Shown here: positions 10,724 to 34,453 of the stretch, one piece after another
Position numbering within the stretch: position 1 is the first letter of the stretch
Layout: each line of letters opens with the position of its first letter
Notes under the pieces: generated by a model
Told to the model about the DNA's origin: nothing
Databases searched by the model: none
Seen by the model: the letters and a program-made list of their open reading frames with translations, nothing else
Assembly (NCBI RefSeq): GCF_006345805.1
Contig: NC_043005.1
Coordinates: 74,958,001 to 75,022,000 of the forward strand
DNA length: 64,000 nucleotides
From: Octopus sinensis
Taxonomy: Eukaryota
Direction: 5' to 3'
Translations under genes and position numbers: made by a program

Positions 10724-10853
10724 ATGGCTGAAGACAAATCTTCTAAAGATGATAAAAGTGATGTACCTACTGCAGCACCGTCATCAGAAACTCTGTCTGA
10801 GTCAGTTGCATCCACGGCAAACATCATACCTGTAATTAAAGTACCTTGGCATA
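10724..10853 (+). CDS. SLC40A1: Ferroportin coding exon 1 (MAEDKSSKDD...PVIKVPWH, phase 1 end); exon begins at acceptor 10691
   Basis: ttttgtttAG acceptor at 10689-10690; in-frame TAA at 10712 before ATG; atcATGG Kozak context; A|GTAAGT donor at 10854; the phase 1 end joins exon 2 in frame. Confidence 0.75.
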
Positions 10854-10937: not shown

Positions 10938-10988
10938 TGTGTAAATGTATATGTTTGTGTGTATATATATATATATATATAATATATA

Positions 10989-11019
<31 letters not shown>

Positions 11020-11380
11020 ATATATTTAACGATTATTTATATCATTATTTATATATTTAATGATTATATATATATATATATTTAATGATTATTTTTCTCT
11101 GACATATATAATATATATTTTTGAATTTTGGAAACTGTTTCACTTGGTTTAGTCTTGTCTGTATATGTAGGCGTCGGAATGGCTGTCTGGTTAGGAAGTT
11201 TGCTTCCTAGCTATATGGCTTCGGGTTCAGTCCCACCGCATGGCACTTTGGGCAATTGTCTTCTGCTATATCCTCGGGCCGACCGAAGCTTTGTGATTGA
11301 ATTTGGTAGGCGGAAGTTACTGCCATGTATGTATATGTGTGCGTAGGTGCTTGTGCCTCTCCGAGAGAGAGACAGAGGGA

Positions 11381-11416
<36 letters not shown>

Positions 11417-13629
11417 ATAATAATAATTTTTATAAGCTTAAAGCTTATAAAATATTATTAATATTATTATTACAGAATTATTCGGTGCTTGTGGCCAATA
11501 AAAGAAAGTATTATTTACAGAATTGTAAAAATCAAACCTGCTTACCAAAAACCATCACATATATATATATATATATGTATTCTGATTACCATTTTGAAGT
11601 TCCCATGGTGAGTGACCGGTGGATAGCTGCATGTTCAAACCACTTTCTATATTGAGTAATTTTTTCATCTGATTTGTATATACACATATACATATGTGAG
11701 TGTGTGCGCATGAATCTATATATATCAGTGTCTAAAATAGTGTCTATGTGTCTGTGTGTGTTTGTGTACATATTAAAATTTAGTTTAGTAAATAGACTCA
11801 CAAAAATCATAGTGTCGAAAATTTGATCATCTCCAACAATTTACCATCTTGATGCTAACAATTTCTTTTCAGGGTTCTTTTATCATAACATCCTTTTGTT
11901 TTTCTATCAACGCCCAAGTGATTGTTATTTTAATGATTCAAGAGAGATTAGTTAAATTAGCTGTTAAAACTTTCAGCACAAGGCTGCTGTCTTTTTATAC
12001 ACTCAGCAAAGCTTTCAAACAGCAAATGTCAAGGACGGAACTAAATGTTGAATGATGTGTTTGTAGTTGTACTGTCCATAGCTATCCGGGCTCTGAGTAT
12101 GCTGTTTTCTGTAACCCCACCGTCCTTCTCATCTGAGAAAAAATAAATGATATAGATATGTAATGAGGAATTTTAGTTCTGAAATAGGTTTTGAACATGT
12201 ATTTATGTAACTTGCTTCATAAGGCTGGGGTCATTCCAGGTTATAGGTCCCAGAAATATCACTATGTGTAGAGCTGACCAGGCCCGCCAGTACTCTCTAT
12301 TGCTTGTGGGCCCCGTGCCAGCCCCTCTGCATTCTCCAAAGTGTCATTGAGCTTCTTGAGATCTTCCCCAATATATCTGTATATTGTTATTGGAAACATA
12401 TATCTGTATCTATATAGTAAATATGTGTGAGTGTATCTGTGTTGTAACCATTCCAGTCAATTTGGTGTTGCTGTTTTATGTCTCTTCTTTCCATGACTCA
12501 GTTTGTTGTGTGACCTCCAGTGACATTATTCTAGAGTTATTTTTACAAGCTGGGAGAAACATTTATAAATTTCCCAGCCTTGATGCAGTACCAGACAGTG
12601 GCTCTCATGGCTTCTGATCTTAACTGATTGGAAGTGTTATCATGTACATTGTTTTGTGAGCTGGCAGAAACGTTAGCACGCCGGGCGAAATGCGTAGCCG
12701 TATTTCGTCTGTTGTTACGTTCTGAATTCAAATTCCTCCGAGGTCGACGTTGCCTTTCATCCTTTCGGGGTCGATTAAATAAGTACCAGTTACGCACTGG
12801 GGTCGATATAATCGACTTAATCTGTTTGTCTGTCTTTGTTTGTCCTCTCTGTGTTTAGCCCCTTGTGGGCAATAAAGAAATAGGTATTAAAGATGGGCTA
12901 CAGCAAATATTCTGCTCAATACCACAGATTTGCTTGTCAGTTGTTTGACCTTAACCATTTGACCATGTCCCTTAATGGCCGACGATATGTGCAGAAGTAG
13001 TGGGGAAGCATCATAGCCATGTGTTAAAAGGAATTCTTGGAGGTTTGGATAATTCACCTTTGGAAATATGGGTGGTTTGTTCAAAGTCCTTAAACAATCC
13101 TTATTCAGGGACCTTTTGAGCAGGATGGGCTACTCAACCAGAAGAAAATTCTAACTGGGCCCCACCTACAAGGTCATGTGCTGTTTATCTTGATATGAGA
13201 TCACCATGTCATGCACATATGGTTGTGATGCATGTGCCTGGTGTACCCTTATCAGACGGGTATTTGTGATGGGTATACTGGGCTTCGTATATTTTACCCC
13301 AGTGTCACTTTGATGGTATGCACTGCTCTCTCACTCAATAATAATGATGATGATGATGATAAAGGCTTTACTTGTAAAAACAGAGACTTAATATCTCTGA
13401 GTGAAAGGAAGAAAGTGAGAGGGGAAGGATTGTTTACTGCTCCTACTGGTTTGTGATAACCGACTTAAAGATCAATGTATCAAAATTATTTTTTGTCGTT
13501 TTTTGTAGCTTTATGTGTTTTATTTATTTGTATTAATTTATTTCTTTGCTTTATAAAGAAATGAATAGATAAGAAATTTTTTGTGGAAGGTAGGAGTTTG
13601 ACTACTTGATTTCACTTCTGACATTACAC

Positions 13630-13727
<98 letters not shown>

Positions 13728-14352
13728 CATGCCTATATGGCTGATACAGTCATTCATTTTTCCTCAATCTCTGTCATTTACATGTAGTCTTGATTCTTTA
13801 TGGTAAACTTGCACTATCTTCAAGAACAGAAGCCCCAGAAACAGACATGTCTCTGGCACTCTCCTCACACACTGCTGAATGATTTCCATCCGCCTCAATA
13901 CATTTTACATTTTGAAACACAGAAAATTCATAAGAGATATTATCTTTGAATGAAAACCTCAGTAAATTTGCTTTTCATTGTATATTTACATTAAGTATGA
14001 TACACAGATGATTATTTTAATCTAATACTGTGTCTGTTGCATACAACAAATATTTATTCAACCAGGCAACAATTTACAATACCAGTGAATGTGTATTCAC
14101 TGTTTTCTCACATATCAGTGGTGACAAATTTCATCTAAGCATGTGGGGCTTGGTGTGTGTACATACTACGGACAATGCCCAACAGGGCAGAAATACTCAG
14201 GTGTTTTCTCTTCCTGTTGCTGGGACAGTTTCTGTCTCCCTCCAATATACATTGTTTTTAAACATAACATGTCTGTAAGAGATGTTATCTCCAGACAAAT
14301 ACTAATTTAAATTTGCTGTTCAACAATCTAGTTATAGCCATCCTTTTAATTA

Positions 14353-14863
14353 CCGTAAATCCTCAAGTATAATCTGCATTTTCCCCCAAAATTTAAAGGT
14401 CAAAATCCTTAGTATGTATTATACACAAGGTTAAAAATGAAAATTATTTTCTAAGCAATGTCCGAGTCTCTATTTGCTGTCCGGCAATGTTTATTCAGAT
14501 GCATTTTGTAATGTCGGACGCGAAAATATCTTAAGCTAAGCCTGAAAGCAATGAAGTCATAAAAGAATCATCCATAAGTTGCAATAAGCAACATTTATTA
14601 AATGTTATTACTGTTATTTCTTTATTTTCTGCAAACAAAATGCACAGAAAAGCTACACGTTTGCATTATGTTATATTTACAATAATGATAAAGTACATTA
14701 CCGTATACATTTTTACAAACCAAGGACGTTATATAGACCTCTTTGACTCAAGTTAGAGAAGGGGTGCGTATTATACACAAGGTTTAGGCTTTTCAGAGGT
14801 ACAGACCCCTAAAAATCACCTGCGTATTATACTCAAGGGCAGACTATACTCGAGGGTTTACGG
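14353..14863. mobile_element. 511-bp TA-flanked Tc1/mariner-pogo type MITE
   Basis: TA|CCGTAAATCCTCAAGTATA...ATACTCGAGGGTTTACGG|TA. Confidence 0.8.
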
Positions 14864-14977
14864 TACTGAAAAACAGTAATCCATGATTTTGTTGTTTGGT
14901 AGGTATGCATGTGAGACTCAGGGACGTATGTTCCAGGTGTGCTAGGAGAGTACTGCACATCCATTGAAAATGGCAAA

Positions 14978-15372
14978 TCTTTATATATAAAAGAGAGGTT
15001 GTGTGCTCTCTGTCTCCTATGATTTAGATTCCTAACTGCTCCCACATTTTGTGGTGCACTTTAACCAAAACCGGGTATCTTATAGTCGTGATTCATATCG
15101 AGCCCTTCTGGGTATTAGCGTGCGTCTACGATGAGTCTATGATTTAAAAAAAATTTACCATCAATTTTTCCCATTTTTTAATGCATTTTTGGCATATATA
15201 AGGGAAGTAACTCTCTAAAAATGTATTATTAAATCTCAGAACGTAAAAAGCTACAGTACCCCCCCCCTTTGTGGTTAGCCATATTGAGATGGCTATTATA
15301 CTTTACATCTCTAAAAATGCTTATATAGTTATTTTCCTTACAAATCCGAGCAACGCCGGGCGATACTGCTAG
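14978..15372 (+). mobile_element. Non-autonomous Helitron (same family), SLC40A1 intron 1
   Basis: A|TCTTTATATATAAAA...ccgagcaacgccggg...CTAG|T. Confidence 0.92.
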
Positions 15373-16934
15373 TTTATTATAAATATTAAGCTTCCGTGTC
15401 GGTGGCACGTAAAAAGCACCATCCAAATCGTAGCCGAAGCCAGTGCTACCTCGACTGGCTTCCATAAAATGCACCATCCGAATTGTGGCCGATGCCAGCG
15501 TCGCCTCGACTGGCTTCCATGTCGGTGGCACGTAAAAAGCACCATCTGAATCGTAGCCTAAGCCAGTGCCACCTTGACTGGCTTCCATAAAATGCACCAA
15601 TCTGACCGTGGCCGATGCCAGCCTCGCCTGGCACCAGTGCAGGTGGCACGTAAAAAGCACCCACTACACTCACGGAGTGGTTGGCGTTAGGAAGGGCATC
15701 CAGCTGTAGAAACTTTGCCAGATAAGACCGGAGCCTGGTGCAGCCTTCTGGCTTCCCAGATCCCCGGTCGAACCGTCCAACCCATGCTAGCATGGAGAAC
15801 GGACGTTAAACGATGATGATGATGATGATGATGATGATTAACCTTACTTGTTAATTTAATCACAAATCTTAGTGGAAAACTTTTGTTATACTCCAGCTTG
15901 AAATTTGGTGGCATTAGGTGTAGCAGCACACCCAATACAACAACTGCGATATGCCACTGGTGAAGCTGTGCATGAATGATATAACAACACAAAGCAAACA
16001 CTTAATAGTAGCTTTTGTTTCACCACACAAGTAATATTGAGGTTGGTCATGAATTATAAGTTTAACAAAAGGTCAACACAACTGAAGGAATAATTCAGTA
16101 ATACTCTTTTACTCTTTAACTCTTTTGCTTGTTTCAGTCATTTGACTGCGGCCATGCTGGAGCACCGCCTTTAGCCGAGCAAATTGACCCCAGGACTTAT
16201 TCTTTGTAAGCCTAGTACTTATTCTATCGGTCTCTTTTGCCGAACTGCTAAGTTACAGGGACGTAAACATACCAGCATCGGTTGTCAAGCAATGTTGGGG
16301 ATACAAACACAGACACACAGACACAGACACACACACACACACACACATATATATACATATATACAATGAGCTTCTTTCAATTTCCGTCTACCAAATCCAC
16401 TCACAAGGCTTTGGTTGGCCCAAGGCTACAGTAGGAGGCACTTGCCCAAGGTGCCACGCAGTGGGACTGAACCCGGAACCATGTGATTGGTAAGCAAGCT
16501 ACTTACCACACAGCCACTCCTGCGCCTAGTGTTCATAAATATTTGATTATTAAAGCTCTGTACTGAAATTTGTCAAGACAAGAATATATACACACTAGAT
16601 TTATATCAGTCAACTATATTGACATATTCAGGCTGAGCAGAAGGTTGTGAAAACAACTACTGTAAACAGCAAGAGAGTGTGTGGAGCAAGGCCATGGGTT
16701 ATTACTAGTTTTTATATAACTCTTGTAAGGAAATGTACTAGAGCCTTATATGATAGAATGACCTTTCACATGATGTCTGGCTACTGCTTGCTCGTGTGAA
16801 CAAGATTGTGCTATGTCGTGGCTTAAACTTTGTTATTTGACAACTTGGTTTGAAGTCATTAAAAATAATCATTGAATTATTTATGAAGTTTTTTCAAATT
16901 CAGATTTTCAAATTATATATTTATGCATTTTCAG

Positions 16935-17002
16935 GAAACTTGAAGAAATATTTCACAAGTCTATCCTTCCTTGTCTACAGTAGTCATGCTCTTTCCTGCT
17001 GG
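16935..17002 (+). CDS. SLC40A1: Ferroportin coding exon 2 (NLKKYFTSLSFLVYSSHALSCW)
   Basis: ttttcAG acceptor, GTAAGT donor at 17003; 68 nt; matches ferroportin TM1 (human YLTSAKFLLYLGHSLSTW). Confidence 0.93.
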
Positions 17003-18355
17003 GTAAGTAAAAGACAAGAATAAAGTTTTTTTCATCATTGAAACTAATTTTTTTTAAAACAATTGATTTTATGTATTAGCTGGAAATGTTTTAAAAACCA
17101 TCATCATCATCAGTTTAATATTCATATTCTCATGTTTGCCTGGGTTAGATCAGTGGTTCCCAACTGGGGTCAATATGGCCCTTGGGACTCCATATGGCAC
17201 TTGTGGGATCCATATGAGATTTTGTTGTTAAAGTTTCATCATCATCATCATCATCATTTAGCATCTGTTTTCCATGCTAGCATGGGTTGGACGGTTCAAC
17301 TGGGGTCTGTGAAACCAGAAGGCTGCATCAGGCCCAGTCTGATCTGGCAGTGTTTCTATGGCTGGATGCCCTTCCTAACACCAACCACTCCGCGTGTGTA
17401 GTGGGTGCTTTTTACGTGCCACCTGCACAGGAGCCAGACAGAACTGGCAAACGGCCACGAACGGATGGTGCTTTTACGTGCCACCGGTACGGGGGCCAGG
17501 CGAGGCTGGCAATGGCCACGAACGGATGGTGCTTTTTACGTGCCACTGGCACAGAGGCCAGTCGGGGCGGCGCTGGCAATGGCCACGATCGGATGGTTCG
17601 CTTACTTGTCACCGGCACTGGTATCACAGCCGCAATTTCCATTGATGTTGATCGACTTCGATTTTGGTTCTGCTTTCTGATTTGATTTGGTTAAAGTTTA
17701 TCTGCAATAAATCTGCTATATTTCTACAATTCACAAATTATGTTAACAATTTTTTAATACAATTCCTTATAATATTTAATTATAAAAATATATGATTTTT
17801 TAAACATCAAATGGCTAGGAGGGTCCATCTGAGTAAAATAGGAATCAAAAGCATCTAGAAGCAAAAAATGGTTGAGAAACACTAGATGAGATGGAATTCT
17901 TTGAGGCAGATTTTCTACAATGTTCTTCTAGTTGCCAGCCCTCATCTGTTTCCAAGCATGGTGCCTGACGTACGGGAGATCCACTCTTTAGGTAATTCCC
18001 TAATAGTTTCTCTATATTTGAGAACTTCACTTGTACTTTTCTTTTTGTCCTTTATATCTGAAAAGTCTAAAGTGGCAAGCTGGCAGAATCATAAGCACAC
18101 CAGGCAAAATGCTTAGCAGCATTTTGTCTGATTTTATGTTCTGAGTTCAAATCCCACCGAGGTTGACTTTACCTTTCATCCTTTCAGGGTTGATAAAATA
18201 AGCACCAGCTGAGTATTGGGGGCAACATAACTGACTTACTCCTTATCCTGAACTTGCTGGCCTTGTACTGAAATTTGAAGTCAGTATCTGAAAAGTCTAA
18301 CTTTGCTTGATACAAAACCAACGAAATTGCTCAAGTGTTCTCCTTTTATTTTCTA

Positions 18356-19626: not shown

Positions 19627-19786
19627 GGAGACCGTATGTGGTCGTTTTCGGTTGGACTCTTTCTGATAGAGATTGCTCCTGAAAATCTAAGGCTCACTGC
19701 TACCTATGGCCTGTTGTCAGGCATCATGATCTTTTTCATGGGTGCTATCGTTGGCAATTGGGTTGACAAAACTGAACGGTTGAAAA
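19627..19786 (+). CDS. SLC40A1: Ferroportin coding exon 3 (GDRMWSFSVGLFLIEIAPENLRLTATYGLLSG...GAIVGNWVDKTERLK)
   Basis: ccAG/GTAAGT boundaries; 160 nt; GDRMW and G.WVD...RLK ferroportin motifs. Confidence 0.97.
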
Positions 19787-19974
19787 GTAAGTGAAACTAT
19801 TTCTCTGTTTAAGATAATATATCATTAACCATGCAGCTTTCAGTCATAGAGGGAGTCGGTGTTGATGTTATGTTTGGAAAGATGAACAAGTTTTCATGAA
19901 GTTTTAGCTTTTAACATTTTATTACCCTTCAAAATCAATGAATTATTCAACAAGAGAACCTCTGTGTGGTCTCT

Positions 19975-20178
19975 ATAACTGTTTTCTCGGTGACAATGTG
20001 AGACTTATATAACTGTTTTCTTGGTGACAAAGTGAGACTTATATAACTGTTTTCTTGGTGACAAAGTGAGACTTGCATAACTGTTTTCTTGGTGACAAAG
20101 TGAGACTTACATAACTGTTTTCTTGGTGACAAAGTGAGACTTATATAACTGTTTTCTTGGTGACAAAGTGAGACTTAT
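19975..20178. repeat. 34-bp minisatellite, about 6 copies
   Basis: Unit ataactgttttcttggtgacaaagtgagacttat at 19975, 20009, 20043, etc. Confidence 0.95.
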
Positions 20179-21655
20179 TAAGGCACCCTGCCAAATGTTT
20201 TTGCCTATTCCTTTTCAGAAGATTTTCATGTCATATAGGAGTTTCCTTCTTTGAGTCTTGTAAAGTTCTGGTAACTTAGAATCTGCATCCAGGAAGGTCA
20301 TCCATATCTTGAGATATATAGTTTTCCAGAGCAACACCACCAATTTATCTTGATTCAGGCTTATAAATCAGGGTATATATCTTATAGTTATTAAGAGGAA
20401 TGACTAGTAACCATGTGCAAAAAATCCTGATCTCATGGGTAGCTACCGCAACTAATCCAATGACCTGACATTGTTAAGCAAGTGAATTTGCTTCCAGGCT
20501 GATCTTATCCATCTGCATTTATAGAACCAACTCTTAATACAGCCATATGAGGAAAACGAAAAGTGGGAAAGGTCACATACCTTGTTTTTGAAGGGACAGG
20601 TAATGTTGTTTTCTTGGTGGCAAAGAGGCTTATTAAGGCACGCTGCCAAAGGTTTTTCTCCATCTTTTTCAGAAGATTTTTCAAGTCACATAGGAGTTTC
20701 CATGTAAACTTCTCGTAATTTTTTTTTATCAGAAGTCCATTATAGGGTGTTTTGGGGATAAGATCCTCGAAGCCCTCCTCCTCCTCTTCTATTTTTGTAG
20801 TTTTTTGTTACATTGTGTTGTGTCCTTCATCAATTCACTATTGTTTTGTTTTTTTTCATTTAGAACAGAGGAGTTGAGAAGTGGTGTGGCTAGTGTAGTT
20901 GATGATGATGATGATGATATTGTTTTTGTTGTTTCTGTTTTAGCAACTTTTCTTCAATCTGGAATTAAAAACTTGCTCATGAATTAGACTCACTAGGGGG
21001 CACCCCTTCATCAATGATGCTCAGCTTATAACGATTTTAATGAATGTTGTCTAAACCTATATATTAATATTGATTTTCACTTGAAAATGAATTATATAAT
21101 TCACAGCCAGTTTTATATTTCCTCTCCCTCTGTGATAACCAATCATTCATCATACTAACTTCGCTCTCTGTAGAGAACTATGGCTCAATGTCCGTTTATA
21201 AATCAGCAGAACACATGCAAGATGTTGTTAATATTGTTTGCATTGCTGATTAAAGAAGAATCAGAAATTGTAATTGTGCTTTTATGGCTCTCTCTCAATG
21301 CTTGTTCAGCTTGAATGCTATTTGATATCTTTGTTCTTTGCATTCACTCTCAGTAACAATTCTATATGTTTATTCACATATGCGTTCGTGTTTGTCTATG
21401 AATGTATATTCTTTTGATTGCCGCCACACTAAGGCACAACTTTGAAGGTCTTTTAGTCAACCACATCTACCTCAGTGTTTAATTTGAGACTTGTAGTCTT
21501 CTCTCAGTCACTATTTGCTGCAATGCTAAGTCAAGTCATGGAGATGTAAACATAATAACACTGATTGTCAAGCTGAAGAACTTCTATGTAGTGGGACTGA
21601 ACCTGAAACTACATGGTTGTAAAGTAGACTTCTTAACCATGTGTCCATACGTGTT

Positions 21656-21727
<72 letters not shown>

Positions 21728-23049
21728 TTAACATCCATCTTCCATGTTGGCATGAGTTGGAATGTTTTGGGCTTACAAAGAATAAGTCCTGGGGTTGATT
21801 TGCTCGACTAAAGGCGGTGCTCCAGCATGGCCGCAGTCAAATGACTGAAACAAGTAAAAGAGTAAAAGAGTATATCTAAAACATTTTTGTACTCCAGAAA
21901 ATAAAGGTATTAAGTTTCCTTTCTGTTTTCTTCATTGTTTAAATGAGGATTATAAATTACTTAAGCTTGCCACTGCACTACCAGTTATAATCTCAAATGT
22001 ATAGTTTGTATTATTACAGAACATAGAGACAGTGAGCTGGCAGAATTGTTAGCATGCTGGGTAAAATTCTTTGGGGCGTTTCATCTGTCTTTGTTCTGAG
22101 TTCAAATTCCGCTGAGGTTAACTCTGACTTTCATCCTTTCGGGGTTGATAAAATAAGTACCAGCTGAGTGCTGAGGTCAATGCAGTCGACTTACCACTTT
22201 CATCGAAATTGCTGGCCTTGTGCCAAAATTTGAAATCATTACTACAGAACATACAGGTGATGAGATGGTAGAATTTCTAGCACGCTGGGTGAAATGCTTA
22301 GCAGCATTTTGTCTGTCTCCATATTCTGAGTTCAAAATCTGCTGAGGTTGACTTTGCTTTTCATCCTTTTGGGGTTGATAAAATAAGTACCAGTTGAGTA
22401 CTTGGGCCGATGTAATCTACTTATCCTCCTCTTTCAAATTCCAGGCCTTGTGCCTATAGTAGAAAGGATTATTCTCTGCTTGCAAAGACCTGTTGAGGCA
22501 AGTGAAATCAAAGTCGAAATCGAAATCAAATTCGATGACTGCCATCCGTGCTAGTGGAGCGCTAAGAGTACCATCCGAGCATGATCGTTGCCAGAGCAAA
22601 AAACTGGCTTCTGTGCTGGTGGCACATAAAAAGCTCCATTCAAGCATGATCGTTACCTGCATCGCCTTACTGGCACTTGTGCTGGTGGCACGTGAAAAAA
22701 CATTCGAGTGAGGTCATTGCCAGTGCCGCTGGACTGGCTCCTGTGCAGGTGGCACATAAAAAGCACCATTTGAGCATTGCCGTTGCCAGTACCGCCTGAC
22801 TGGCCCTCGTGCCGGTGGCACGTAAAAGCACCCACTACACTCTTGTAGTGGTTGGCGTTAGGAAGGGCATCCAGCTGTAGAAATTCTGCCAGATCAGATT
22901 GGAGTTTGGTGCAGCCATCTGGTTCACCAGACCTGTCAAATCGTCCAACCCATGCTAGCATGGAAAGCAGACGTTAAACGAGGATGTTAATGATGATGAT
23001 GACATTCATAAACAAACACTGAAGCATCGAGTGAGCTGGTATTTTTAGA

Positions 23050-23300
23050 AATGAAGAAAATCTCAAGTACAAGAAAATAGCTCAGAGGATTGGGTAAAAC
23101 ACTCTTATAGATGGGAAAACATGGCCAGCAAACCGCTACAGAGAATCAAACTCTGTACTTCTCAAATTCTAAAAGTACAGAGTTTGATTCTTTGTAGCAG
23201 TTTACTGGCCATGTTTTCCCAAATATAAGTATACTTTACATGATTCTCTGAGCTCTATTCACAGCTGTTCTCCTGCATTTTAAGATTTCCTTCATTTGTA
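23050..23300. repeat. Foldback (about 250 bp) in SLC40A1 intron 3
   Basis: Inner arms 23113-23160 and 23173-23220 are near-perfect reverse complements, 12-nt loop; weaker outer arms. Confidence 0.85.
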
Positions 23301-24037
23301 CAAATAGTAAGATTACATTTTGGGCAAACAAGAGTTTTACTGTTTTGTTTGATTTCATATTTTACAAAGTAGTCCTTTTGTGTTCTGAGTTCAAAACCTG
23401 CAGGTGGCAGCTTTATCATTTCAACTTCCCTGAGTCAAACATCAAGCATGTGATGAAATATGGTGGATAAAATTGACTGCTCCCTTCTTATCTCATGATG
23501 TTTTTAGCATTTTGATTTTATATATGTATGCCCTTACTATCACCTCATTTTACAGTATAGACTGAGAGTCTTTTATCATGCTATCATCATGGCAGAGCAG
23601 CTGTCTCCCAAAACTGATGTACCCTCCACTGCACTGAATTAGTTAACCCTTACAAAAAGCTTTCTTTCGGCCAAATTAAGATATGGATATTATTGTATAA
23701 GGGATTTTTCTTGGTTAATATTTCCTTAGTTTTTGTTATATTTAATTTTGACAACTTGCACTCCATCAGTTCCAGTTGATCCCATCAACAGAAGAGCCTG
23801 CTCATGAAATTTATGTGCAAGTGGCTGAGTACTCCACAGATGCATGTACTCTTAACATAGTTCTCAAAGAGATTCAGAATGATGCAGAATATGGCAAGGT
23901 TGGCCCTTTGAATTAAACATTTGTTTTGTTGCAGTCCATGCATTTACTGATACTAAAATGAAAATTTACACCCAGACACATATATACATGTATACACATT
24001 CATATCTATGTATATTCTTTTTTTTTTTATTTTACAG

Positions 24038-24280
24038 CTGTTAAAATATCATTATTCATCCAGAACTCAAGTGTAATAGCATGTGCAATTGTTGTAGCAG
24101 TCTATTTAACTTGGAAAACCCAAATTGTTGACACTTGGAATGGATTTGGAGACATTCTCTCCAAAATTGCAATAATCGGTTTAGCTATTATTGCTAGACT
24201 TGCTTCCTTGGCAGGAAACATTTCTGTACGCAATGACTGGATTGTTGAAATAAGTGAAAGAGACCCAACTAAACTTGCTT
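24038..24280 (+). CDS. SLC40A1: Ferroportin coding exon 4 (TVKISLFIQNSSV...ARLASLAGNISVRNDWIVEISERDPTKLA)
   Basis: poly-T tacAG acceptor, GTGAGT donor; 243 nt, phase 1-1; QN.SV and DWIV motifs. Confidence 0.96.
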
Positions 24281-25887
24281 GTGAGTATTTCATCTCGGTG
24301 AAAATATATATTAAACTTCTAAACTTCTTTTTAAAATATCTTTATGTATTGTAATTTTAAAATATGAAAATAAATCTTTACTGAAATAAATATGTTTTCT
24401 TAAAATGTTTTAACGATATCATAGTTGATTTTGTCAAAAATTAAAAATCAAATTCGATGATTGGCATCCGTGGTGCTAGCGGGATGCAAAGAGCACCATA
24501 CGAGTGTGATCATTGACAGAGTGGCGAACCGGCTTCCATGCCAGTGGCACTTAAAAGGCACCATTCGAGCATGATCGTTACCAGCGTCGCACTACTGGCA
24601 CTTGAGCCCCGTGCTAGTAGGGTATTAAGAGCACCATCCAAGTGTGATCGTTGCCAGAGCGGCTATCTGGCCTCCGTACTGGTGGCATGTAAAAAACACC
24701 ATTCCAGCGGGATCGTTACCAGCATCGCCTTACTGGCACCTGCGCCGGTGGCATGTGTAAAAGATTCGAGCGAAGTCGTTGCCAGTGCCACCTGACTGGT
24801 CCTGTGCCGGTGGCACGTAAAGCACCCACAACACTCTCGGAGTGGTTGGCGTTAGGAAGGGCATCCAGCTGTAGAAACTCTGCCAGATCAAGATTGAAGC
24901 CTGGTGCAGCCATCTGGTTCGCCAGCCCTCAGTCATATGTCCAACCCATGCTAGCATGGAAAGCAGACATTAAACGATGATGATGATAGTTGCTATACAA
25001 TCAATTGAAAATTGTAAAGGCTGAGGTTTAAATGTAGTTCTAAATTTTGAAAAAATTTTTAGCAGATACAGATGTGAATGTGTGATTAAGAAGCTTGCTT
25101 TCCTACCATATTATCAGCATCTCAGGCGAGTGTTTTCTACTATAGCCCCAGGCTGACCAAAGTCTTGTGAGTAGACTTAGTAGATGGAAACTGAAAGAAG
25201 CCCATCACATACATACATGCATGGATGCATGATTGCATACATACATATTTATAAATATTAAATACATATACTACTCTTTACTCTCTTTTACTCTTTTACT
25301 TGTTTCAGTCATTTGACTGTGGTCATGCTGGAGCACTGCCTTTAGTCGAGCAAATCAACCCCAGGACTTATTCTTTGTAAGCCTATTACTTATTCTGTTG
25401 GTCTCTTTAGCCAAACTGCTAAGTTACAGGGATGTAAACACACCAGCATTGGTTGTCAAGTGATGTTGCGGGGACAAACACACACACATACGACGGGCAT
25501 TGGCTCAGGTGCTTTTTACATGACACCAGCTTTTTATGTGGCACAGAGTTAATCAGATCAGAGAACATATTCCAGTTGATAGATTGCCAGTCTGTCATAG
25601 GTAACTATATGATACCTATTCTTTGACAAGGCAAACCAGAGCAATGGAGACATAAATATCTTGCTCAAAAACACACATACCAATTAGATGTATAGTGCTA
25701 GTATCACTGGCTTTTACTTTCCGTATTGCTTAGTTTCATTTAGATCATTGGTTCTCAACCATTTTTTTTTATCTGTGGACCCCTTTGATTCCTACTTTAC
25801 TTGGATGAACCCTCTTAGTCATTTGGTGTTTAAAAGAATCATATTTTATTTTTATAATTAAATATTATTAGCAATTGTATAAAAAAT

Positions 25888-26236
25888 ATCACTGATCTAG
25901 ATGGTCTGATCACTGATCTAGATGGACTGATCACTGATCTAGATGGTCTGATCTTTGATCTAGACGGTCTGATCACTGATCTAGATGGACTGATCACTGA
26001 TCTAGACGGACTGATCACTGATCTAGATGGACTGATCACTGATCTAGATGGACTGATCACTGATCTAGACGGACTGATCACTGATCTAGACGGACTGATC
26101 ACTGATCTAGACGGACTGATCACTGATCTAGACAGACTGATCACTGATCTAGACGGACCGATCACTGATCTAGATGGACTGATTACTGATCTAGACGAAC
26201 TGATCACTGATCACTGGTCTAGATGGACTGATCACT
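25888..26236. repeat. 21-bp minisatellite, about 16 copies
   Basis: Unit atcactgatctaga(t/c)ggactg; explains the SPSRSVI pseudo-ORF. Confidence 0.95.
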
Positions 26237-26662
26237 TGAGGGTAAAATGTCTTCAGCTATTATAAGCCACAGTGCCTTTGGCGGCATATGAACTCCTGAT
26301 TCTTTGGTTAGTAGGCACAAGTATTTTAATTGTTTGGCTAGCAGCGACACTCTTGTTAAAGCATAAATTTTGTCAAATATAAATCTACAATCAATGATTC
26401 AAGGTATGATTAATTGTTTTCTTTCATGTTATATCTTATTTTCTGAAATTATGGCATAACATCAAACATGTATCTTTTACTTCTTTTCTAGAAGAGAAGA
26501 AAGAGAGAGAAAATAAAAATATAACATTAACCTCTTTATTCATTTACATTCTATCTTAATGTAAAACTATATTGATTTGATTAATTTTTATTAGTTCTTA
26601 ATTTCTTAACAGTGTTTTAATTAATTTTTGATCTTTGTCATCCTATTAATTTATTTATTTAG

Positions 26663-26890
26663 ACATGACTGCTGCCCTACGCCGTATTGACCTTGCAGTT
26701 AAACTCCTGTCACCTATTCTTGCTGGTCAGTTAATGACATACATTTCTATTGTGGCTGGTTCCCTGTTTATTGCTGTTTGGAATTTTATCTCAGTATTTA
26801 TAGAGTATTTTTTGCTATACAAAGTCTTCCAAGCAGTTCCAACTCTGGCTACAAAGAAAAAAAGTGTAACTGCTGGAGAAGAACAACAAG
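26663..26890 (+). CDS. SLC40A1: Ferroportin coding exon 5 (YMTAALRRIDLAVKLLSPILAGQLMT...WNFISVFIEYFLLYKVFQAVPTLA...)
   Basis: tttAG/GTAAT boundaries; 228 nt, phase 1-1; RRID, GQLMT, WN..S...EY motifs. Confidence 0.96.
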
Positions 26891-26999
26891 GTAATATGCT
26901 AACTAAAAACTATTGTATACTCCTCCTCTACCACCACTATGTGTGTGTGTGTGTCTGTGTGTGTGTGTGTGTGTGTCTGTGTATACTGACCAACATACT

Positions 27000-27890
27000 C
27001 TCATGGAATGTAACCAAATGAGGTTTATTTTTCAACATGGTCCCTCTTGTGGCTCATAGACTTTTTCCATCAATGTTGCAGTGCTTAAATCCTTTTGGTG
27101 AAGAAGCTTTCATCAACAGTAGATATGACATCACCATCACTGTAATACTGCTTTATCGTGTTGGGGGAACAGATGATAGAAACTTGAGGTCAAATCAAGA
27201 GAACAGGGAGGATTATCAACCAGGTCAAAGTCACAGTCATGTACAGCAGTCATTGAAACCAAGGACTCATTTGCTGGAGTATTGTCCTGATGAAACAAGA
27301 CTCCCTTTCATCAATTTTCCAGGGTTTTTTGTCTTAATAGCCTTTTATAACTGCCTCAGTAATTTGGCATAGAATTCTCCATTGATGGTGTGGTCATTTT
27401 GAAGATGGTTAATAAACACAATGCCTTTCACATCCCTAAAATCTGAGGCCATCACCTTCCCTGCAGATGAAATGATCTTGGCCTTCTTTGAAGCAGGCAA
27501 GGAGAGGTGTTTCCACTTCATGGATTGTCTCTGGCTCAAAGTGATGAAGCCAATACTCATACTGGGTTGGGAAATGTTTGAGGAAACCAGCTGGATTTCC
27601 TGTGATGTGATCAGCTTCTTGCGCTGTTTATCAGCTATCACATGTAACACTCGCTGAACAGAAACCTTCATCACACCAAGTTCATTGTGTAGAATATTCT
27701 CAACTCTCTCGCAATGTATGCCAGTAGCACTGGCTGTGTGATTTAGAGTTGACTCTCCATCTTCCATCACCATGTGGTGAACACAACCATTGTTTCCCTT
27801 GGTGGTGGCAGTTGCAGGACATCCAGACCCTGAGTCATATTCAAGACTCTCCCTTTCTCTCCTAAATTCAGCTGCCCACTTTTGCACTCT
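27000..27890 (-). mobile_element. Degraded mariner transposase in SLC40A1 intron 5
   Basis: Minus frame 27345-27887: KWAAEFRR.RESL, SGCPAT, LHNELGVMKVS, KKAK...SAGKVMAS, TINGEFYAKLLRQL. Confidence 0.85.
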
Positions 27891-28979
27891 CTTTTACTCT
27901 TTTACTTGTTTCAGTCATTTGACTGTGGCCATGCTGGAGCACCGTCTTTAGTCGAGCAAATCCACCCCAGGACTTATTCTTTGTAAGCCTAGTACTTATT
28001 CTATCGGTCCCTTTTGCCGAACTGCTAGCTTACAGGGATGTAAACACACCAGCATCGGTTGTCAAGCGATGTTGGGGGGACAAACACAGACACACAAACA
28101 TATACACGCACATACATATATATATATATACATACATATATATGATGGGCTTCTTTCAGTTTCCGTCTACCAAATCCACTCACAAGGCTTTGGTCGGCCC
28201 AAGGCTATAGAAGAAGACACTTGCCCAAGGTGCCATGCAGTGGGACTGAACCCGGAATCATGTGGTTGGTAAGCAAGCTACTTACCACACAGCTACTCCT
28301 GCTTACAAAATAAATATAAGATAAAAAAAATTGTCAACTTTTATTATATTCATTATATAGATTGTTTCCGGTATAGATAAATATTATTAAGAAATATTAC
28401 TGGTCCCTGGCACACTGGAAAAAAAAATGCCTGTATGCCACATCAGATAGTTTGAGAAGCACTGTTTTAGATTACAGTAAGCTTTTGGCTATCGCAAGTG
28501 TTACGTTCCAAGACCTCCGATAGAAATAATTGAAATCTAAAAGTATATATATACCTATCAGCTGCAGAAACCCGGATATACTGAGGAGTCTGTGATATAA
28601 ATTTACATATGCTGAGACCCCCTTCAGTCATGACTGACCATGGGATTGCACCTAGAAATTTACCCTCCTAGGTACAAGTCCGGGCAAGTTGTTTATGGAA
28701 GACCAGCAGTCGCCCATGCATACCGGCTTCCCGTCTCCATGCCACCAGTGTTATCCAAGGGAAAGGCAACAGCTGGTACAGTTTGGCACTGTGACGTTGC
28801 AAGTCATTTGTACAGCTGAGTGAACTGGAGCAACGTGAAATAAAGTGTCTTGCTCAAGAACACAACACGCAGCCCGGTCCGGGTATTGAACTCACAACCT
28901 CATGATCATAAGCTCGATGCTCTAACCATTGAGCCATGTGCCTTCACAATTAACATATATTAGCCAGAAAAATCCTTGA

Positions 28980-29128
28980 TGTACTAAGTGCGCGATAGGT
29001 GAACTGTGAAGTACTGAGTGTGTGATAGGTGAACTGTGAAGCACCGAGTGCGCGATAGGTGAACTGTGAAGTACTGAGTGCGCGATAGGTGAATCACGAT
29101 GTACTGAATGCACAATAGGTGAACTGTA
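28980..29128. repeat. 30-bp minisatellite, about 5 copies
   Basis: Unit gtactgagtgcgcgataggtgaactgtgaa. Confidence 0.9.
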
Positions 29129-29263
29129 GTATGGTGAGGGATTACTGAACAACGAAACTTCCATGAACTTTTTTCCTATTATTTTGAAATTTACTGTTTT
29201 GCTGTCTGAAAAATAGTTGAAAATCATCTTTTGTTAACATGTCTTTTTTAATTTCTTTTCCGG

Positions 29264-29584
29264 CTGAAAATGATGATCAAAACAAAAATAAATCAGAATC
29301 AAATGATGTGGAGGGAACCTCAAATTCTGTTGAAGAATCCACTGAAAGCCCACAGTTAGAAGCCATGAAAGTGAGCTCAGATGATACTCAACCAAAACCA
29401 GATGAAAGCTCCCCAAAAGCTTGTAGCAGATTAGCTAAACATCCTCTGTGCATGTCTTTTTTCTCTGGAATATTTACCCTTTACAATGGCTGGAGCATAT
29501 ATCTAAAATATGATGTGGCCCCTGCTGGATTTGGACTTGCTCTCGTATATATGACAGCCCTTGGTTTTGACAATATCACTGTTG
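29264..29584 (+). CDS. SLC40A1: Ferroportin coding exon 6 (central loop to AGFGLALVYMTALGFDNITVG); 5' boundary uncertain (29264 non-canonical or 29297 canonical)
   Basis: open frame 29239-29655 contains YMT.LGFD motif; G|GTAAGA donor at 29585; pyrimidine tract ends in ccGG at 29262-29263; next in-frame AG at 29295-29296. Confidence 0.88.
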
Positions 29585-31500
29585 GTAAGAATCTTTACTT
29601 AAAACTTGATGTTTATTTATTCATTACACTGACATATAACCACGTACATTTATAAATCGCAACTGTGTATAACTGCATATATTTATAAGCAGGGCTGATT
29701 GAATTTGTTTCTCTAAATGACTTATTTTTTTTTTAATCAACCTCAGAATAAAGCAAAATTAATCCATTAGTTTTTGAAATCAGGATGTAGAAATGTGAAA
29801 GCAAACATTGTTGTGATGCTGTTTCTACTATTTTATTATCTGGAATTTAAAATTATCTAAAAAATAAAAAAAAAATGCTAAATTTATTTTAAAACATCTA
29901 AATTAAAACAATACAAAATTTCCAGTTTTAGTTTTAATCCAAACCTGAAAATGTTTAAACATTATTTTTGATTAGGCACAAGACCAGTTTCTTACTAAAT
30001 GCAGAATAGTTGAATCAACCACAGTATATTACTGGTATGTAGATTAAAAGCACCATCCGAACGTTGCCGATGCCAGCACTGCCTTGACTGACTTCTGTGC
30101 CGGTGGCATATAAAAAGCACCAACCGATTGTGGCTATTTGCCAGCCCCCTCTGGCCCCGGTGCCAGTGGCATGTAAATGGCATGTAAAAAGCACCCACTA
30201 CACTCATGGAGTGGTTGGCGTTAGGAAGGACATCCAGCTGTAGAAACACTGCCAGATCAGACTGGAGCCTGGTGCAGCTGCCTGGCTTCCCAGACCCTGG
30301 ACGAACCGTCCAACTCGTGCTAGCACGGAAAATGGATGTTAAACGATGATGATAATGAAAGACATAATCAATACTGACAGTATTTTTGAATCAGCATCTT
30401 CATCAGAATCATTTTACACTGCTTTTCCACTCTTATGTGAGTTGGATGGTTCTTCTGAGGTCATGTTTTCCAGCCAAATGCTCTTGTTGCCCACCTTTTT
30501 GGTCATTTCTTATGTCATGCATAAAAAGGTGGTATATCTGTTCTAGAACCTGGATGTACAATCTTATTTTTAACCCTCAATGTAGAATGACAAAAACAAC
30601 AATTTCAGGAGAGGGGGTTAGTTGATTACATCGACCCCCCCCCCCCAGTGTTCAACTGGTACTTATTTTATTGACTCCAAAAGGCAAAGTCAACCTAGGC
30701 AGAATTTTTGCTTAGAACATAAAGATGGACAAAATACCTATCTCTTTACTACCCACAAGGGGCTAAACACAGAGGGGATAAACAAGGACAGACAAACGGA
30801 TTAAGTCGATTACATCGACCCCAGTGCGTATCTGGTACTTAATTTATCAATACCGAAAGGATGAAAGGCAAAGTCGACCTCGGCGGAATTTGAACTCAAA
30901 ACGTAACAGCAGACGAAATACGACTATGCATTTCGCCTGGCGTGCTAACGTTTCTGCCAGCTCACTGCCTTCAAAAAAGTCTACTAATATAATACAGTCA
31001 TTTAAGGTAGTGAGTTAGCAGAATTGTTAGTACACTAGACAAAATACCGAGTGGCAAATTCCACTGAAATCAACTTTGGTTTTCATCCTGTTGGGGTTGG
31101 TAAAATAAGTACAAGTGCATTGAAATTCAATATTATATTGAAACTAATTTAATATAGTTATAGGTGCAGGAGTGGGTGTGTGGTAAGTAGCTTGCTTTCT
31201 AACCACATGGTTCCAGGTTCAGCCCCCCTCTGTGGCACCCTGGGCAAGTGCCTTCTACTATAGCCTTGGGCCAACCAAAGCTTTGTGAGTGGATTTGGTA
31301 GACTGAAACTGAAAGAAGCCTGTCGTGTGTGTGTGTGTGAGTGTGTATATGTTTATGACTGTGTTTGTCCCCGGGTGTGTTTACAACCCCGTAACTTAGC
31401 GGTTTGGCAAAAGGGACCGATAGAATATATACTAGGCTTACAAAAAATAATGCAGTTCTATATTTAACCCCAAGATTCCAAGTTCGATTCCAGGCAGTGA

Positions 31501-31550
<50 letters not shown>

Positions 31551-32095
31551 TCGAAAAAAATAAAATACCTTAGGAACGAGAACCCAGGTTCGAAATTTTC
31601 CCAAAACACCTGATGAAGGCTGAAGGGTATATCAGCCGAAACATTGTGTTAACTAACAAGGTAAGGACAATTATCTGTCAAATGTAAATAATGTAAATAA
31701 TTTACAAAGAATAAGTCCTGAGGTTGATTTGTTTGACTAAAGGCAGTACTCCAGCATGGTCACAGTCAAATGACTGAAACAAATAAAAGAATAGTGTAAT
31801 TAATATAATATATTAATATAGTTGTATTTCGGGATGGTCACACATGAAAACAAAAAGTGTCACTGAAGAGGTCACAGATGTGTGAGAAAAGATTTCCAGA
31901 CAATGGACATGAGTTAAAATTGTAAAATAAGAACAGTACTAAATGAGTGAAGAAAAATATATATATAGGTGTAGGAGTGGCTGTGTGGTAAGTAGCTTAC
32001 TTACCAACCACATAGTTCCGGGTTCAGTCCCACTGCGTGACACCTTCGACAAGTGTCTTCTACTATAGCCTCGGGCTATAGTAGAAGACACTTCG

Positions 32096-32136
<41 letters not shown>

Positions 32137-32497
32137 GTGTATATGTTTGTGTGTCTGTGTTTGTCCCCCCTGACATCTCTTGACAACCGATGCTGGTGTG
32201 TTTACATCCCCATAACTTAGCAGTTCAGCAAAAGAGACCGATAGAATAAGTACAAGGCTTACAAAGTATAAGTCTTGGGGTCGATTTGCTCGACTAAAGG
32301 CGATGCTCCAGCATGGCCACAGTCAAATGACTGAAACACGTAAAAGAGTAAGTGTGTGTGTGTTTATTCGGCAAAAAAATAAAAAATTACTGTCCCGAAA
32401 TACAACATCCGTTTCAACATACAGTTTCATAGAAATCTTTCAAAACGAATTAATATGGTGTTTCCATTTAATTGTTTATTTCTATAATTCATTTCAG

Positions 32498-32917
32498 GTT
32501 TCGCCTATTCACAAGGTATAACGGAATCAATTCTTGGAATTCTTATGGCTTGTGGAGCTATAATTGGTATCATGTCAACATTTGTTTACCCAAGAATCAG
32601 AAACAAAATTGGTTTGTCGAGAACTGGTCTCATAAGTTTTTCACTGGAAATTTTTTGCTTGACACTTTGTTTAATGTCAATTATCGCTCCAGGAAACCCT
32701 TATAAATTTATGACATACCCTCATTTAATAGAAAAATCCACTGTATCACAAAATAATGCTTCGATGGCCATCTATAATGTCACCAGCACCACCAGCAGCG
32801 AATTTTCAGCTCAGTCAAATATAACATCAACAACTGTTGCCCCTGAAAATGTTAAAAAGCTATCATCGTACATTTCCATTGCTTTATTAATGGGTGGAAT
32901 CATCACTGCTCGATTTG
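32498..32917 (+). CDS. SLC40A1: Ferroportin coding exon 7 (GFAYSQGITESILGILM...GLSRTGLIS...PGNP...LLMGGIITARF)
   Basis: tttcAG/GTAAGT boundaries; 420 nt, phase 1-1; matches human AYTQG, GLVRTGLIS, PGSP, AARIG. Confidence 0.96.
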
Positions 32918-34169
32918 GTAAGTTGATTACATTAGTCTTTGTCATAGTTTTTCATCTAGATTCACACTAGTGATGGATCTAAATATTTATAGATTATATA
33001 GGCACAAATGTGGCTATGTGGTAAGAAGCCTCATTCCCAACTTCATGGTTCCAGGTTCAATCCTTCTCTGTGGCACCTTGGACAAGTGTCTTCTACTACA
33101 GCCTTGGACTGACCAAAACCTCCTGAGTGGGTTTGGTAGAAGGAAACTGAAAGAAACTTGCCACATGTGTGTGCGTGTGTGTGTCTGTGTATGTGATACA
33201 CACACACCATGTATATATTCCTGGATATGAATATGCTTTCCTTTATTTTATTTGTTTCAGTCATTTGACTGTGGCTATGCTGGAGCACCACCTTTAGTCA
33301 AACAAATCAACCCCAGGACTTATTCTTTGTAAACCTAGTACTTATTCTATCAGTTTCTTTTGCTGAACTGCTAAGTTATGGGGACATAAACACACCTACA
33401 TTGGTTGTCAAGTGATGGTGGTGGAACAAACACAGACACAGAAACAGTTACATATACATATATACGACGGGCTTCTTTCAGTTTCCATCTACCAAATCCA
33501 CTCACAAGGCTTTGGTTGGCTTGAGGCTATAGAAGAAGACACTTGCTCAAGGTGCCATGCAGGGGGACTGAACCTGGAGCCATGTGGTTGGTAAGCAAGC
33601 TACTTACCACACATCCACTCTTGTGCCTATGTATAAATTCATATATATATATATATATATCATCATCATCACCATCGTTTAACATCCGCCTTCCATACTG
33701 GCATGGGTAGAACGGTTTGACTAAGGACTGGCGAGCCAGATGGCTGCACCAGGCTCCAATCTGATCTGGCAGAGCTTCTACAGCTGGATGCCCTTCCTAA
33801 TGCCAACCACTCTTAGAGTGTAGTGGGTGCTTTTACGTTCCACTGGCATGGGGGCCAGTTATGCGGTACTGGCTATGGCCATGCTCAAATGCTGTTTTTT
33901 AAGTGCCACCTACACAGGAACCAGTTCAGTGGCACTGGCTCCTCACTTGAATGTTGTTCATATGCCACCGGCACAAGTGCCAGTAAGAGATGCATTCAGT
34001 AACAGTTCTTTAAAGTAAAGACTATTTGCCAACATAATGTGGCAGTCCTGGAAGGGACGATTGTTACTGTTGTTTAGCCTCAGGAAATATCATTTCCAGC
34101 TGGCTATACCATGCAATATTTGTGTCCTTATATTTTGTTTTTTAATATTTATTATCTTTATCTTTCCAG

Positions 34170-34453
34170 GTTTATGGTCTGCAGATTTGACAGTAACTCA
34201 GCTTTTTATGGAAAATGTAGATGAATCTGAACGTGGTGTTGTGAACGGTGTTCAAAATTCTTTGAATATGCTTATGGATATGTTAAAATTTTTATTGGTT
34301 ATTTTGATATCAGAAACGTCTGACTTCTACATTTTAATCATTATCTCTTATATGTTCATTTGCTTTGGCGGTATGAGCTTTGCAAGATACTCTTACCGTG
34401 CTCGTGGGCATTTATTTCATTTTGACAAAGTATGTGCATGCTCTAAACAGTAA
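34170..34453 (+). CDS. SLC40A1: Ferroportin coding exon 8 with stop (GLWSADLTVTQLFMENVDESERGVVNGVQNSLN...GHLFHFDKVCACSKQ*)
   Basis: ctttccAG acceptor; GLW..DLTVTQL...E.ERG..NGVQNS signature; TAA 34451-34453. Confidence 0.95.

What the first reader, a model, noticed from the sequence alone, without database searches (positions are those of the whole stretch)
19627..34453. Ferroportin with three of four vertebrate metal ligands replaced (H43S, C326N, H507K)
Seen: GDRMWSF (exon 3), LGFDNITVG (exon 6), SLNMLMDMLKF (exon 8). Established: human ferroportin (GDRMWHF, LGFDCITTG, SMNYLLDLLHF) binds metal at S1 (D39/H43) and S2 (C326/H507). Here D39, D181, D325, D504, R178 and R466 equivalents are kept but H43 is Ser, C326 is Asn and H507 is Lys. 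Inference: S2 cannot work as a Cys/His site. A Lys next to D325/D504 could act as a built-in cation, implying a different coupling mechanism or metal preference (Fe vs Co/Ni/Mn/Cu/Ca). That matters in a probable cephalopod, which uses copper haemocyanin. The N/K state may be general to invertebrates rather than unique.
Basis: partly seen in the sequence, partly recalled or inferred. Interest (0 to 1): 0.75.

Follow-up and report, generated by a model that had tools for sequence, protein, structure and literature searches.

The report
Ordinary octopus ferroportin, protostome-typical metal-site residues
This is the normal, intact octopus copy of the iron-export protein ferroportin, and the three "replaced" metal-binding residues are the standard state in non-vertebrate animals rather than an octopus peculiarity.

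Summary
The + strand carries an intact 8-exon, 606-aa SLC40A1/ferroportin gene (10724-34453). It has Ser, Asn and Lys at the positions of human H43, C326 and H507. D39, R178, D181, D325, R466 and D504 are kept.

The residues are not unusual:
- Position 507 is Lys in 68 of 68 taxon-named protostome sequences (molluscs, brachiopod, nemerteans, annelids, priapulid, chelicerates, centipede). Daphnia, a barnacle, ostracods and a sea spider, named separately, also carry Lys. It is His in 33 of 33 named deuterostome sequences and in a sponge and two cnidarians.
- Cys326 occurs only in vertebrate SLC40A1. This is already published as co-evolution with hepcidin (Nemeth & Ganz 2021).
- H43 is variable everywhere; it is Asn in teleosts.

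Lys507 also occurs in haemoglobin- and haemerythrin-using protostomes, so there is no link to haemocyanin.

Human C326S/Y and H507R variants keep iron export and lose only the hepcidin response. The inference that transport must differ is therefore weak.

The gene is under purifying selection (dN/dS 0.19 against O. bimaculoides).

One residual point of interest: Lys507 was invariant in every named protostome sampled. I found no paper describing this in the searchable library. It suggests the C-lobe site is chemically rewired across protostomes, which is untested.

The parts
10724..10853 (+). Exon 1 (start codon at 10724; MAEDKSS...VPWH; phase-1 donor GT)
   Evidence: tblastn with O. bimaculoides SLC40A1 X1; sequence and splice sites; 97% nt identity to the O. 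bimaculoides exon
16935..17002 (+). Exon 2 (RNLKKYFTSLSFLVYSSHALSCW; start of TM1)
19627..19786 (+). Exon 3: TM1-TM2, GDRMWSF. The Asp39 equivalent is at 19630-19632. The Ser in place of His43 is at 19642-19644.
24038..24280 (+). Exon 4 (TM3-TM4)
26663..26890 (+). Exon 5 (TM5-TM6; R178, D181, N212, S215 and E219 equivalents)
29297..29584 (+). Exon 6: cytoplasmic loop and TM7, LGFDNITVG. The Asp325 equivalent is at 29569-29571. The Asn in place of Cys326 is at 29572-29574.
32498..32917 (+). Exon 7 (TM8-TM9, extracellular loop, start of TM10; R466 equivalent)
34170..34453 (+). Exon 8: TM10-TM12 and stop codon, SLNMLMDMLKF. The Asp504 equivalent is at 34277-34279. The Lys in place of His507 is at 34286-34288.

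Best explanation
The locus is the intact octopus orthologue of SLC40A1 (ferroportin), a 12-helix MFS divalent-metal exporter. Its Ser/Asn/Lys at human positions 43/326/507 are the lineage-typical protostome state, not a change specific to this gene.

Shown here:
- Cys326 is confined to the vertebrate, hepcidin-regulated ferroportin.
- His507 is found in the sponge, some cnidarians and all sampled deuterostomes.
- Lys507 is invariant in all named protostome sequences, paralogues included.
- His43 varies in every group.

Inferred: the protein still exports Fe2+ (and probably Co2+ and other divalent ions). It would use the fully conserved N-lobe cation-site residues (S35, D39, Q99, N212, S215, E219) and the conserved cavity carboxylates D181, D325 and D504. 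The Cys/His pair of the vertebrate C-lobe site is mainly the metal-bridged docking site for hepcidin, a hormone that only vertebrates have. In protostomes Lys552 most likely pairs with the D368/D549 carboxylates (human D325/D504). There it could serve as a fixed or titratable positive charge in gating or H+ exchange, the role a protonated His507 could play in deuterostomes.
For: Gene identity:
- Pfam FPN1 E=6.6e-121.
- 94% identity to O. bimaculoides SLC40A1, with all 8 exons collinear and ungapped in its genome.
- dN/dS 0.19, dS 0.15.
- The AlphaFold model of the orthologue superposes on human ferroportin 6wbv with TM-score 0.95 and rmsd 2.2 A.

Distribution of states:
- 507 is K in 68/68 named protostome sequences and H in 33/33 named deuterostome sequences. 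Crustaceans, a sea spider and an annelid, named through, also have K.
- Amphimedon, Clytia and Rhopilema have H; Hydra and Trichoplax have Q.
- 326 is C in 20/21 vertebrate sequences and in no invertebrate sequence. This agrees with Nemeth & Ganz 2021 (PMC8235187).

The N-lobe site and gate residues are conserved.

Tolerance of such changes in human ferroportin:
- C326S/Y, D504N and H507R keep membrane localisation and iron export but resist hepcidin (PMC6789780; PMC8232785).
- C326S binds Co2+ normally (PMC12594662).
Against: - No transport data were found for any protostome ferroportin. As of a 2014 review, even the C. elegans FPN-1.x roles in iron export were undetermined (PMC4033076).
- In liposomes the tarsier C326A/H508A double mutant transports Co2+ more slowly (PMC7655804 as summarised in PMC12594662). 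The S2 ligands are therefore not irrelevant to transport.
- Strict invariance of Lys in named protostomes argues that it does something specific, not that it is a neutral replacement.
- No iron-responsive element was detected in the window upstream of the gene or in the O. bimaculoides 5' region.
- Nematodes, flatworms and rotifers were not among the named sequences.
Confidence: 0.8

Rival explanations
1. Reader's hypothesis, generalised. Lys507 is a built-in cation that occupies or neutralises the C-lobe site next to D325/D504. Protostome ferroportins would then use a different coupling stoichiometry or have a different metal preference from deuterostome ones.
For: - Lys is invariant in 68/68 named protostome sequences despite only about 40% overall identity and many paralogues. 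This implies strong selection on this residue.
- D325 and D504 are conserved beside it.
- S2 mutation slows transport in tarsier ferroportin, and S2 is proposed as the high-affinity site that drives outward flux (PMC12594662).
Against: - Human H507R, which also places a cationic side chain there, keeps iron export.
- There are no functional data for any protostome ferroportin.
- The split at 507 coincides with a deep phylogenetic split. Other positions (472, 467) are equally diagnostic, so lineage history alone can produce the pattern.
Confidence: 0.25
2. A cephalopod-specific adaptation linked to copper-based haemocyanin, such as a shift towards copper handling.
For: TM11 is Met-rich in octopus (NMLMDMLK), and Met can bind Cu(I).
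Against: - The same S/N/K state, or close variants with K507, occurs in haemoglobin-bearing Tegillarca, Biomphalaria, Capitella and Daphnia, and in haemerythrin-bearing Lingula and Priapulus.
- The M503/M505 pattern is shared by most invertebrates, including His507 deuterostomes.
Confidence: 0.03
3. The apparent substitutions come from misalignment, a wrong gene model or a decaying pseudogene.
For: None found.
Against: - The alignment to solved structures is ungapped around all three sites.
- All 8 exons have canonical splice sites and an open frame.
- Exons match the O. bimaculoides gene without gaps, and dN/dS is 0.19.
- The same residues are present in Octopus, Argonauta and two further close relatives (unnamed; presumably cephalopods).
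- TM7b and TM11 of the window protein contain no His or Cys at all.
Confidence: 0.02

Closest known systems
Human and tarsier ferroportin SLC40A1 (PDB 6w4s, 6wbv, 6vyh, 8dl6-8)
   Same: About 40% identity over the whole TM core (E about 1e-114). The fold is the same (TM-score 0.95). The following residues are the same: D39, Q99, N212, S215, E219, R88, D157, R178, D181, D325, R466, D473, R489 and D504.
   Different: H43S, C326N, H507K. Also Y501M, L503M and L505M on TM11. The N174/Q481 gate pair is replaced by T/M. The animal has no hepcidin, so the hepcidin-docking Cys/His is not needed (PMC8235187).
Other protostome ferroportins (molluscs, annelids, brachiopod, nemerteans, arthropods, priapulid)
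   Same: Lys at 507 in all of them; Asn or Ser at 326; a variable non-His residue at 43. The octopus protein is a typical member.
   Different: Cephalopods appear to have a single gene in the hits seen, whereas Haliotis and bivalves have several paralogues. This was not tested exhaustively.
Human hepcidin-resistant variants C326S/Y and H507R, and the second vertebrate 'ferroportin-like' paralogue (Ambystoma: S326/R507; Pelodytes: S326/H507)
   Same: Non-Cys at 326 and a basic residue at 507, with iron export retained in the human variants. The amphibian paralogues show the same kind of state occurring naturally.
   Different: Arg rather than Lys. The human variants are disease alleles in a hepcidin-regulated setting.
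Bdellovibrio BbFPN (PDB 5aym/5ayn/5ayo/6btx)
   Same: MFS fold with an unwound TM7, and an N-lobe cation site that uses the D39 equivalent (fold match).
   Different: Only about 18% identity. Its C-lobe ligand is His261 at the D325 position. There is no equivalent of the bilaterian D325/D504 plus K/H507 arrangement.

Membership tests
Ferroportin / SLC40 (Pfam FPN1, PF06963) | Full-length match to the FPN1 profile above the curated cut-off | tested here: met
   404 bits against a cut-off of 24.6, E=6.6e-121, profile positions 17-430 of 430 (on exons 3-8)
Ferroportin / SLC40 (Pfam FPN1, PF06963) | 12-TM MFS fold that superposes on solved ferroportin structures | tested here: met
   The AlphaFold model of the 94%-identical O. 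bimaculoides orthologue has TM helices at pLDDT above 90. Against 6wbv_A the TM-score is 0.95 and rmsd 2.2 A.
Ferroportin / SLC40 (Pfam FPN1, PF06963) | N-lobe cation-site residues (S35, D39, Q99, N212, S215, E219) and gate residues (R88, D157, R178, D473, R489) | tested here: met
   All are identical in the window protein
Ferroportin / SLC40 (Pfam FPN1, PF06963) | Fe2+ export activity | not testable with these tools
   Needs a transport assay. No protostome ferroportin assay was found in the literature searched.
Orthologue of annotated cephalopod SLC40A1 | Collinear exon structure and high identity with O. bimaculoides SLC40A1 | tested here: met
   8 of 8 exons ungapped at 91-97% nt identity. 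Protein identity is 570/607 aligned columns, stop included.
Hepcidin-regulated vertebrate ferroportin subclass | Thiol Cys326 together with His507 forming the metal-bridged hepcidin site | tested here: not met
   Asn and Lys at these positions. This is expected, because hepcidin is vertebrate-only (PMC8235187).
IRE-regulated ferroportin transcripts | Iron-responsive element in the 5' UTR | tested here: inconclusive
   No Rfam IRE hit in the whole window at gathering threshold. None at E<=5 in window 1-17100 or at E<=10 in the O. bimaculoides 5' region. The first non-coding exon probably lies left of the window, and transcript ends are unknown.

The most novel reading that the evidence does not exclude
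The His-to-Lys change at position 507 is a fixed character of protostome ferroportins, invariant across every named phylum and paralogue sampled. It marks a rewired C-lobe site: carboxylates D325/D504 plus Lys, flanked by Met503/Met505. In this site Lys acts as an intrinsic counter-charge or proton-relay group. Most animal phyla would then export iron without the Cys/His S2 site described for primates. That would make protostome ferroportins a natural test of whether S2 is a transport site or a regulatory hepcidin site.
Probability: 0.3. Interest if true: 0.5.

Novelty: new member of a known kind. Interest (0 to 1): 0.25.

Why it matters
For this window it matters little. It is a normal orthologue whose "odd" residues are the norm for its superphylum, and the absence of Cys326 outside vertebrates is already published.

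The wider comparative pattern has modest value for the open debate on whether ferroportin's C-lobe site (C326/H507) is a transport site or mainly the hepcidin-docking site:
- Lys507 is invariant in all named protostomes sampled.
- His507 is found in deuterostomes, a sponge and some cnidarians.
- Met503/Met505 in invertebrates is replaced by Leu in vertebrates, exactly where Cys326 appears.

A protostome ferroportin would be a ready-made natural S2 variant to assay.

Tried and rejected
I used a 17-sequence alignment of database homologues instead.
- I looked for a second ferroportin copy in the window. tblastn gave only chance-level hits at 22049-22150 and 59424-59519 (E>0.5).
- I looked for an iron-responsive element with Rfam at gathering and permissive thresholds, in the window and in the O. 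bimaculoides 5' region. I also ran a loop-motif scan. No IRE was found; the motif hits fall mostly in repeats.
- The haemocyanin/copper link was considered and rejected on taxon distribution.
- Pseudogene and misalignment readings were considered and rejected.
- The structure tool returns no coordinates, so Lys552-Asp368/Asp549 distances could not be measured.
Nematodes, flatworms and rotifers are therefore not explicitly covered.
- The neighbour-joining tree is only a rough grouping and was not used for formal ancestral reconstruction.
- Literature searches for a described protostome/deuterostome split at position 507 found nothing.
Full report
**Observation**

I rebuilt the gene from open segments and splice signals. 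I found the two 5' coding exons with the Octopus bimaculoides protein. The model has 8 exons:
- 10724-10853
- 16935-17002
- 19627-19786
- 24038-24280
- 26663-26890
- 29297-29584
- 32498-32917
- 34170-34453

Every intron has GT-AG ends, and the product is 606 aa.

**Identity**

- Exons 3-8 match Pfam FPN1 at E=6.6e-121.
- The best database hit is O. bimaculoides SLC40A1 at 94% identity. The host is an Octopus species other than O. bimaculoides.
- In the O. bimaculoides genome all 8 exons are collinear and ungapped.
- Between the two species dS is 0.15 and dN/dS is 0.19, so the gene is functional and under purifying selection.
- An AlphaFold model of the orthologue has TM helices at pLDDT above 90. 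It superposes on human ferroportin 6wbv with TM-score 0.95 and rmsd 2.2 A.

**Position assignment**

HMMER alignment to tarsier and human ferroportin chains (6vyh, 8dl6; E about 1e-114) has no gaps around the three motifs. Ser72 is at H43, Asn369 at C326 and Lys552 at H507. So are the N-lobe and Ca2+-site residues S35, Q99, N212, S215 and E219, and the gate residues R88, D157, D473 and R489. TM7b and TM11 contain no other His or Cys that could substitute.

**Is it unusual? No.**

I aligned the 120 best homologues and grouped the taxon-named ones.

| Human position | Named protostomes (68) | Invertebrate deuterostomes (12) | Vertebrates (21) |
|---|---|---|---|
| 507 | K 68/68 | H 12/12 | H 21/21 |
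| 326 | N 46, S 19, G 2, K 1 | N 7, S 4, Y 1 | C 20, S 1 |
| 43 | S, A, Q, W, C, I and others | S, A, R, T | N 17 (teleosts), H 4 |

- The protostome set covers many molluscan paralogues, Lingula, two nemerteans, annelids, Priapulus, Tachypleus and Strigamia.
- The deuterostome set covers amphioxus, hemichordates, echinoderms and vertebrates.
- The single vertebrate exception at 326 is a frog 'ferroportin-like' second paralogue.

A profile search of 1.84 billion representatives found 6140 family members. Naming some of these extended the pattern:
- Lys: Daphnia, a barnacle, two ostracods, a sea spider and Owenia.
- His: Saccoglossus, a crinoid and the tunicate Styela.
- His: the sponge Amphimedon and the cnidarians Clytia and Rhopilema.
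- Gln: Hydra and Trichoplax.
- Met: a coral paralogue.

The most parsimonious reading is that His507 is ancestral for animals and Lys507 arose once on the protostome stem. Asp325 is bilaterian; non-bilaterians have S, N or G there. Cys326 is a vertebrate novelty.

The vertebrate-only Cys326 is already in the literature. Nemeth & Ganz 2021 (PMC8235187) state that it first appears in cartilaginous fish, that invertebrates have another residue, and that it co-evolved with hepcidin. I found no paper in the searchable library that describes the Lys/His split at 507.

The link to haemocyanin fails. Lys507 is shared by haemoglobin-bearing Tegillarca, Biomphalaria, Capitella and Daphnia, and by haemerythrin-bearing Lingula and Priapulus (the pigment assignments are from general knowledge).

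The inference that S2 cannot work, and that coupling or selectivity must therefore differ, is weakened by human genetics and biochemistry:
- C326S, C326Y, D504N and H507R are membrane-localised and retain iron export. They are hepcidin-resistant gain-of-function alleles (PMC6789780; PMC8232785).
- C326S binds cobalt normally, and other residues (D325, T320) are proposed to compensate (PMC12594662).
- In the hepcidin complex the Cys/His-bound metal bridges the hormone (PMC8232785; PMC8235187).

On the other side, the tarsier C326A/H508A double mutant is slower in liposomes (PMC7655804, as summarised in PMC12594662). Lys is also strictly invariant across protostome sequences that are otherwise only about 40% identical, which argues that it has a specific role.

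**Most likely mechanism**

Shown: this is an orthologous, selectively maintained ferroportin with an intact N-lobe cation site, intact gates and intact cavity carboxylates.

Inferred: it exports Fe2+ (and Co2+-like ions) as other ferroportins do. The missing Cys/His reflects the absence of hepcidin regulation. Lys552 pairs with Asp368/Asp549 and supplies the positive or titratable group that His507 can supply in deuterostomes.

I put about 0.8 on 'ordinary lineage-typical exporter'. I put about 0.25-0.3 on the stronger idea that the protostome C-lobe site works in a chemically different way. No protostome ferroportin has been assayed in the literature I could search.

**Iron regulation**

No IRE was detected in the whole window at gathering threshold. 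None was detected at permissive thresholds upstream of the gene or in the O. bimaculoides 5' region. The first non-coding exon appears to lie left of the window, so this is inconclusive.

**Verdict**

This is a new member of a known kind and of low interest as a locus. A modest comparative point remains: Lys507 is invariant in sampled protostomes, and Met503/Met505 in invertebrates is replaced by Leu in vertebrates. That would be worth a transport assay.

Noticed in passing
window 26663-26890 (exon 5, human N174 position) and 34170-34453 (exon 8, human Q481 position): The intracellular-gate pair N174/Q481 covaries perfectly across 122 aligned sequences. N174 interacts with Q482 in tarsier ferroportin, and human N174I is a loss-of-function allele. 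The pair is N+Q in 50 sequences and T/S + L/M in 72 (molluscs and the nemertean Tubulanus). The octopus has T+M.
   Followed up: partly
window 34170-34291 (exon 8, TM10-TM11): Besides 507, human positions 472 and 467 separate named protostomes from deuterostomes almost completely. Position 472 is F/Y in deuterostomes and A/S in protostomes. Position 467 is I/V against F/C. This is a caution that lineage history alone yields 'diagnostic' residues.
   Followed up: partly
window 34268-34282 (MLMDM in TM11): Met at human positions 503 and 505 is usual in invertebrate ferroportins. Position 503 is Met in 58/68 protostome and 11/12 invertebrate deuterostome sequences; position 505 is Met in 44/68 and 12/12. 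In vertebrates both are Leu in nearly all sequences (503: 21/21; 505: 20/21), the group that gained Cys326. This may be an exchange of sulfur ligands; it is untested.
   Followed up: partly
related proteins P0121 (Ambystoma) and P0100 (Pelodytes): Amphibians carry a second 'ferroportin-like' paralogue that lacks Cys326. Ambystoma has S326/R507 and Pelodytes has S326/H507. R507 is the same substitution as the human hepcidin-resistant H507R allele.
   Followed up: no
window 47958-50330 (+): A 791-codon open frame with a reverse-transcriptase domain (RVT_1, E=3.8e-33). It is probably a non-LTR retrotransposon copy downstream of the ferroportin gene.
   Followed up: partly
window 27348-27893 (-), inside intron 5: An open frame with a partial mariner-type transposase DDE domain (Transposase_1, E=5e-11). 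It is a transposon remnant in the intron.
   Followed up: partly
window 25888-26212 (intron 4) and 19974-20178 (intron 3): Clean minisatellites: 21 bp x 15.5 copies (93% matches) and 34 bp x 6 copies (96% matches). The first gives a spurious 135-codon open frame (ITDLDGL repeats).
   Followed up: no
window 15390-15629, 17404-17618, 22570-22832, 24489-24746, 58001-58213 and others: A dispersed repeat family with internal subrepeats of about 55-138 bp (tRNA- or SINE-like 'GGTGCTTTTTACGTGCCACCGG...') recurs on both strands. It lies in several introns and in the flanks, and it accounts for many of the long spurious open frames.
   Followed up: no
L001 1-7413 (O. bimaculoides, upstream of SLC40A1): The upstream neighbour in O. 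bimaculoides is a glycosyl-hydrolase-18 (chitinase-like) gene. Sequence matching the window starts only about 4.4 kb downstream of that gene's end, so the gene is probably not in the window.
   Followed up: no
window 16920-16940 and O. bimaculoides isoform X2 (P0001): The predicted alternative start of O. bimaculoides isoform X2 (MCKG...) has no ATG in the corresponding window sequence (IYAFSG...). That isoform is therefore probably not conserved. O. bimaculoides also has Glu where the window has Asp at the human D504 position.
   Followed up: no
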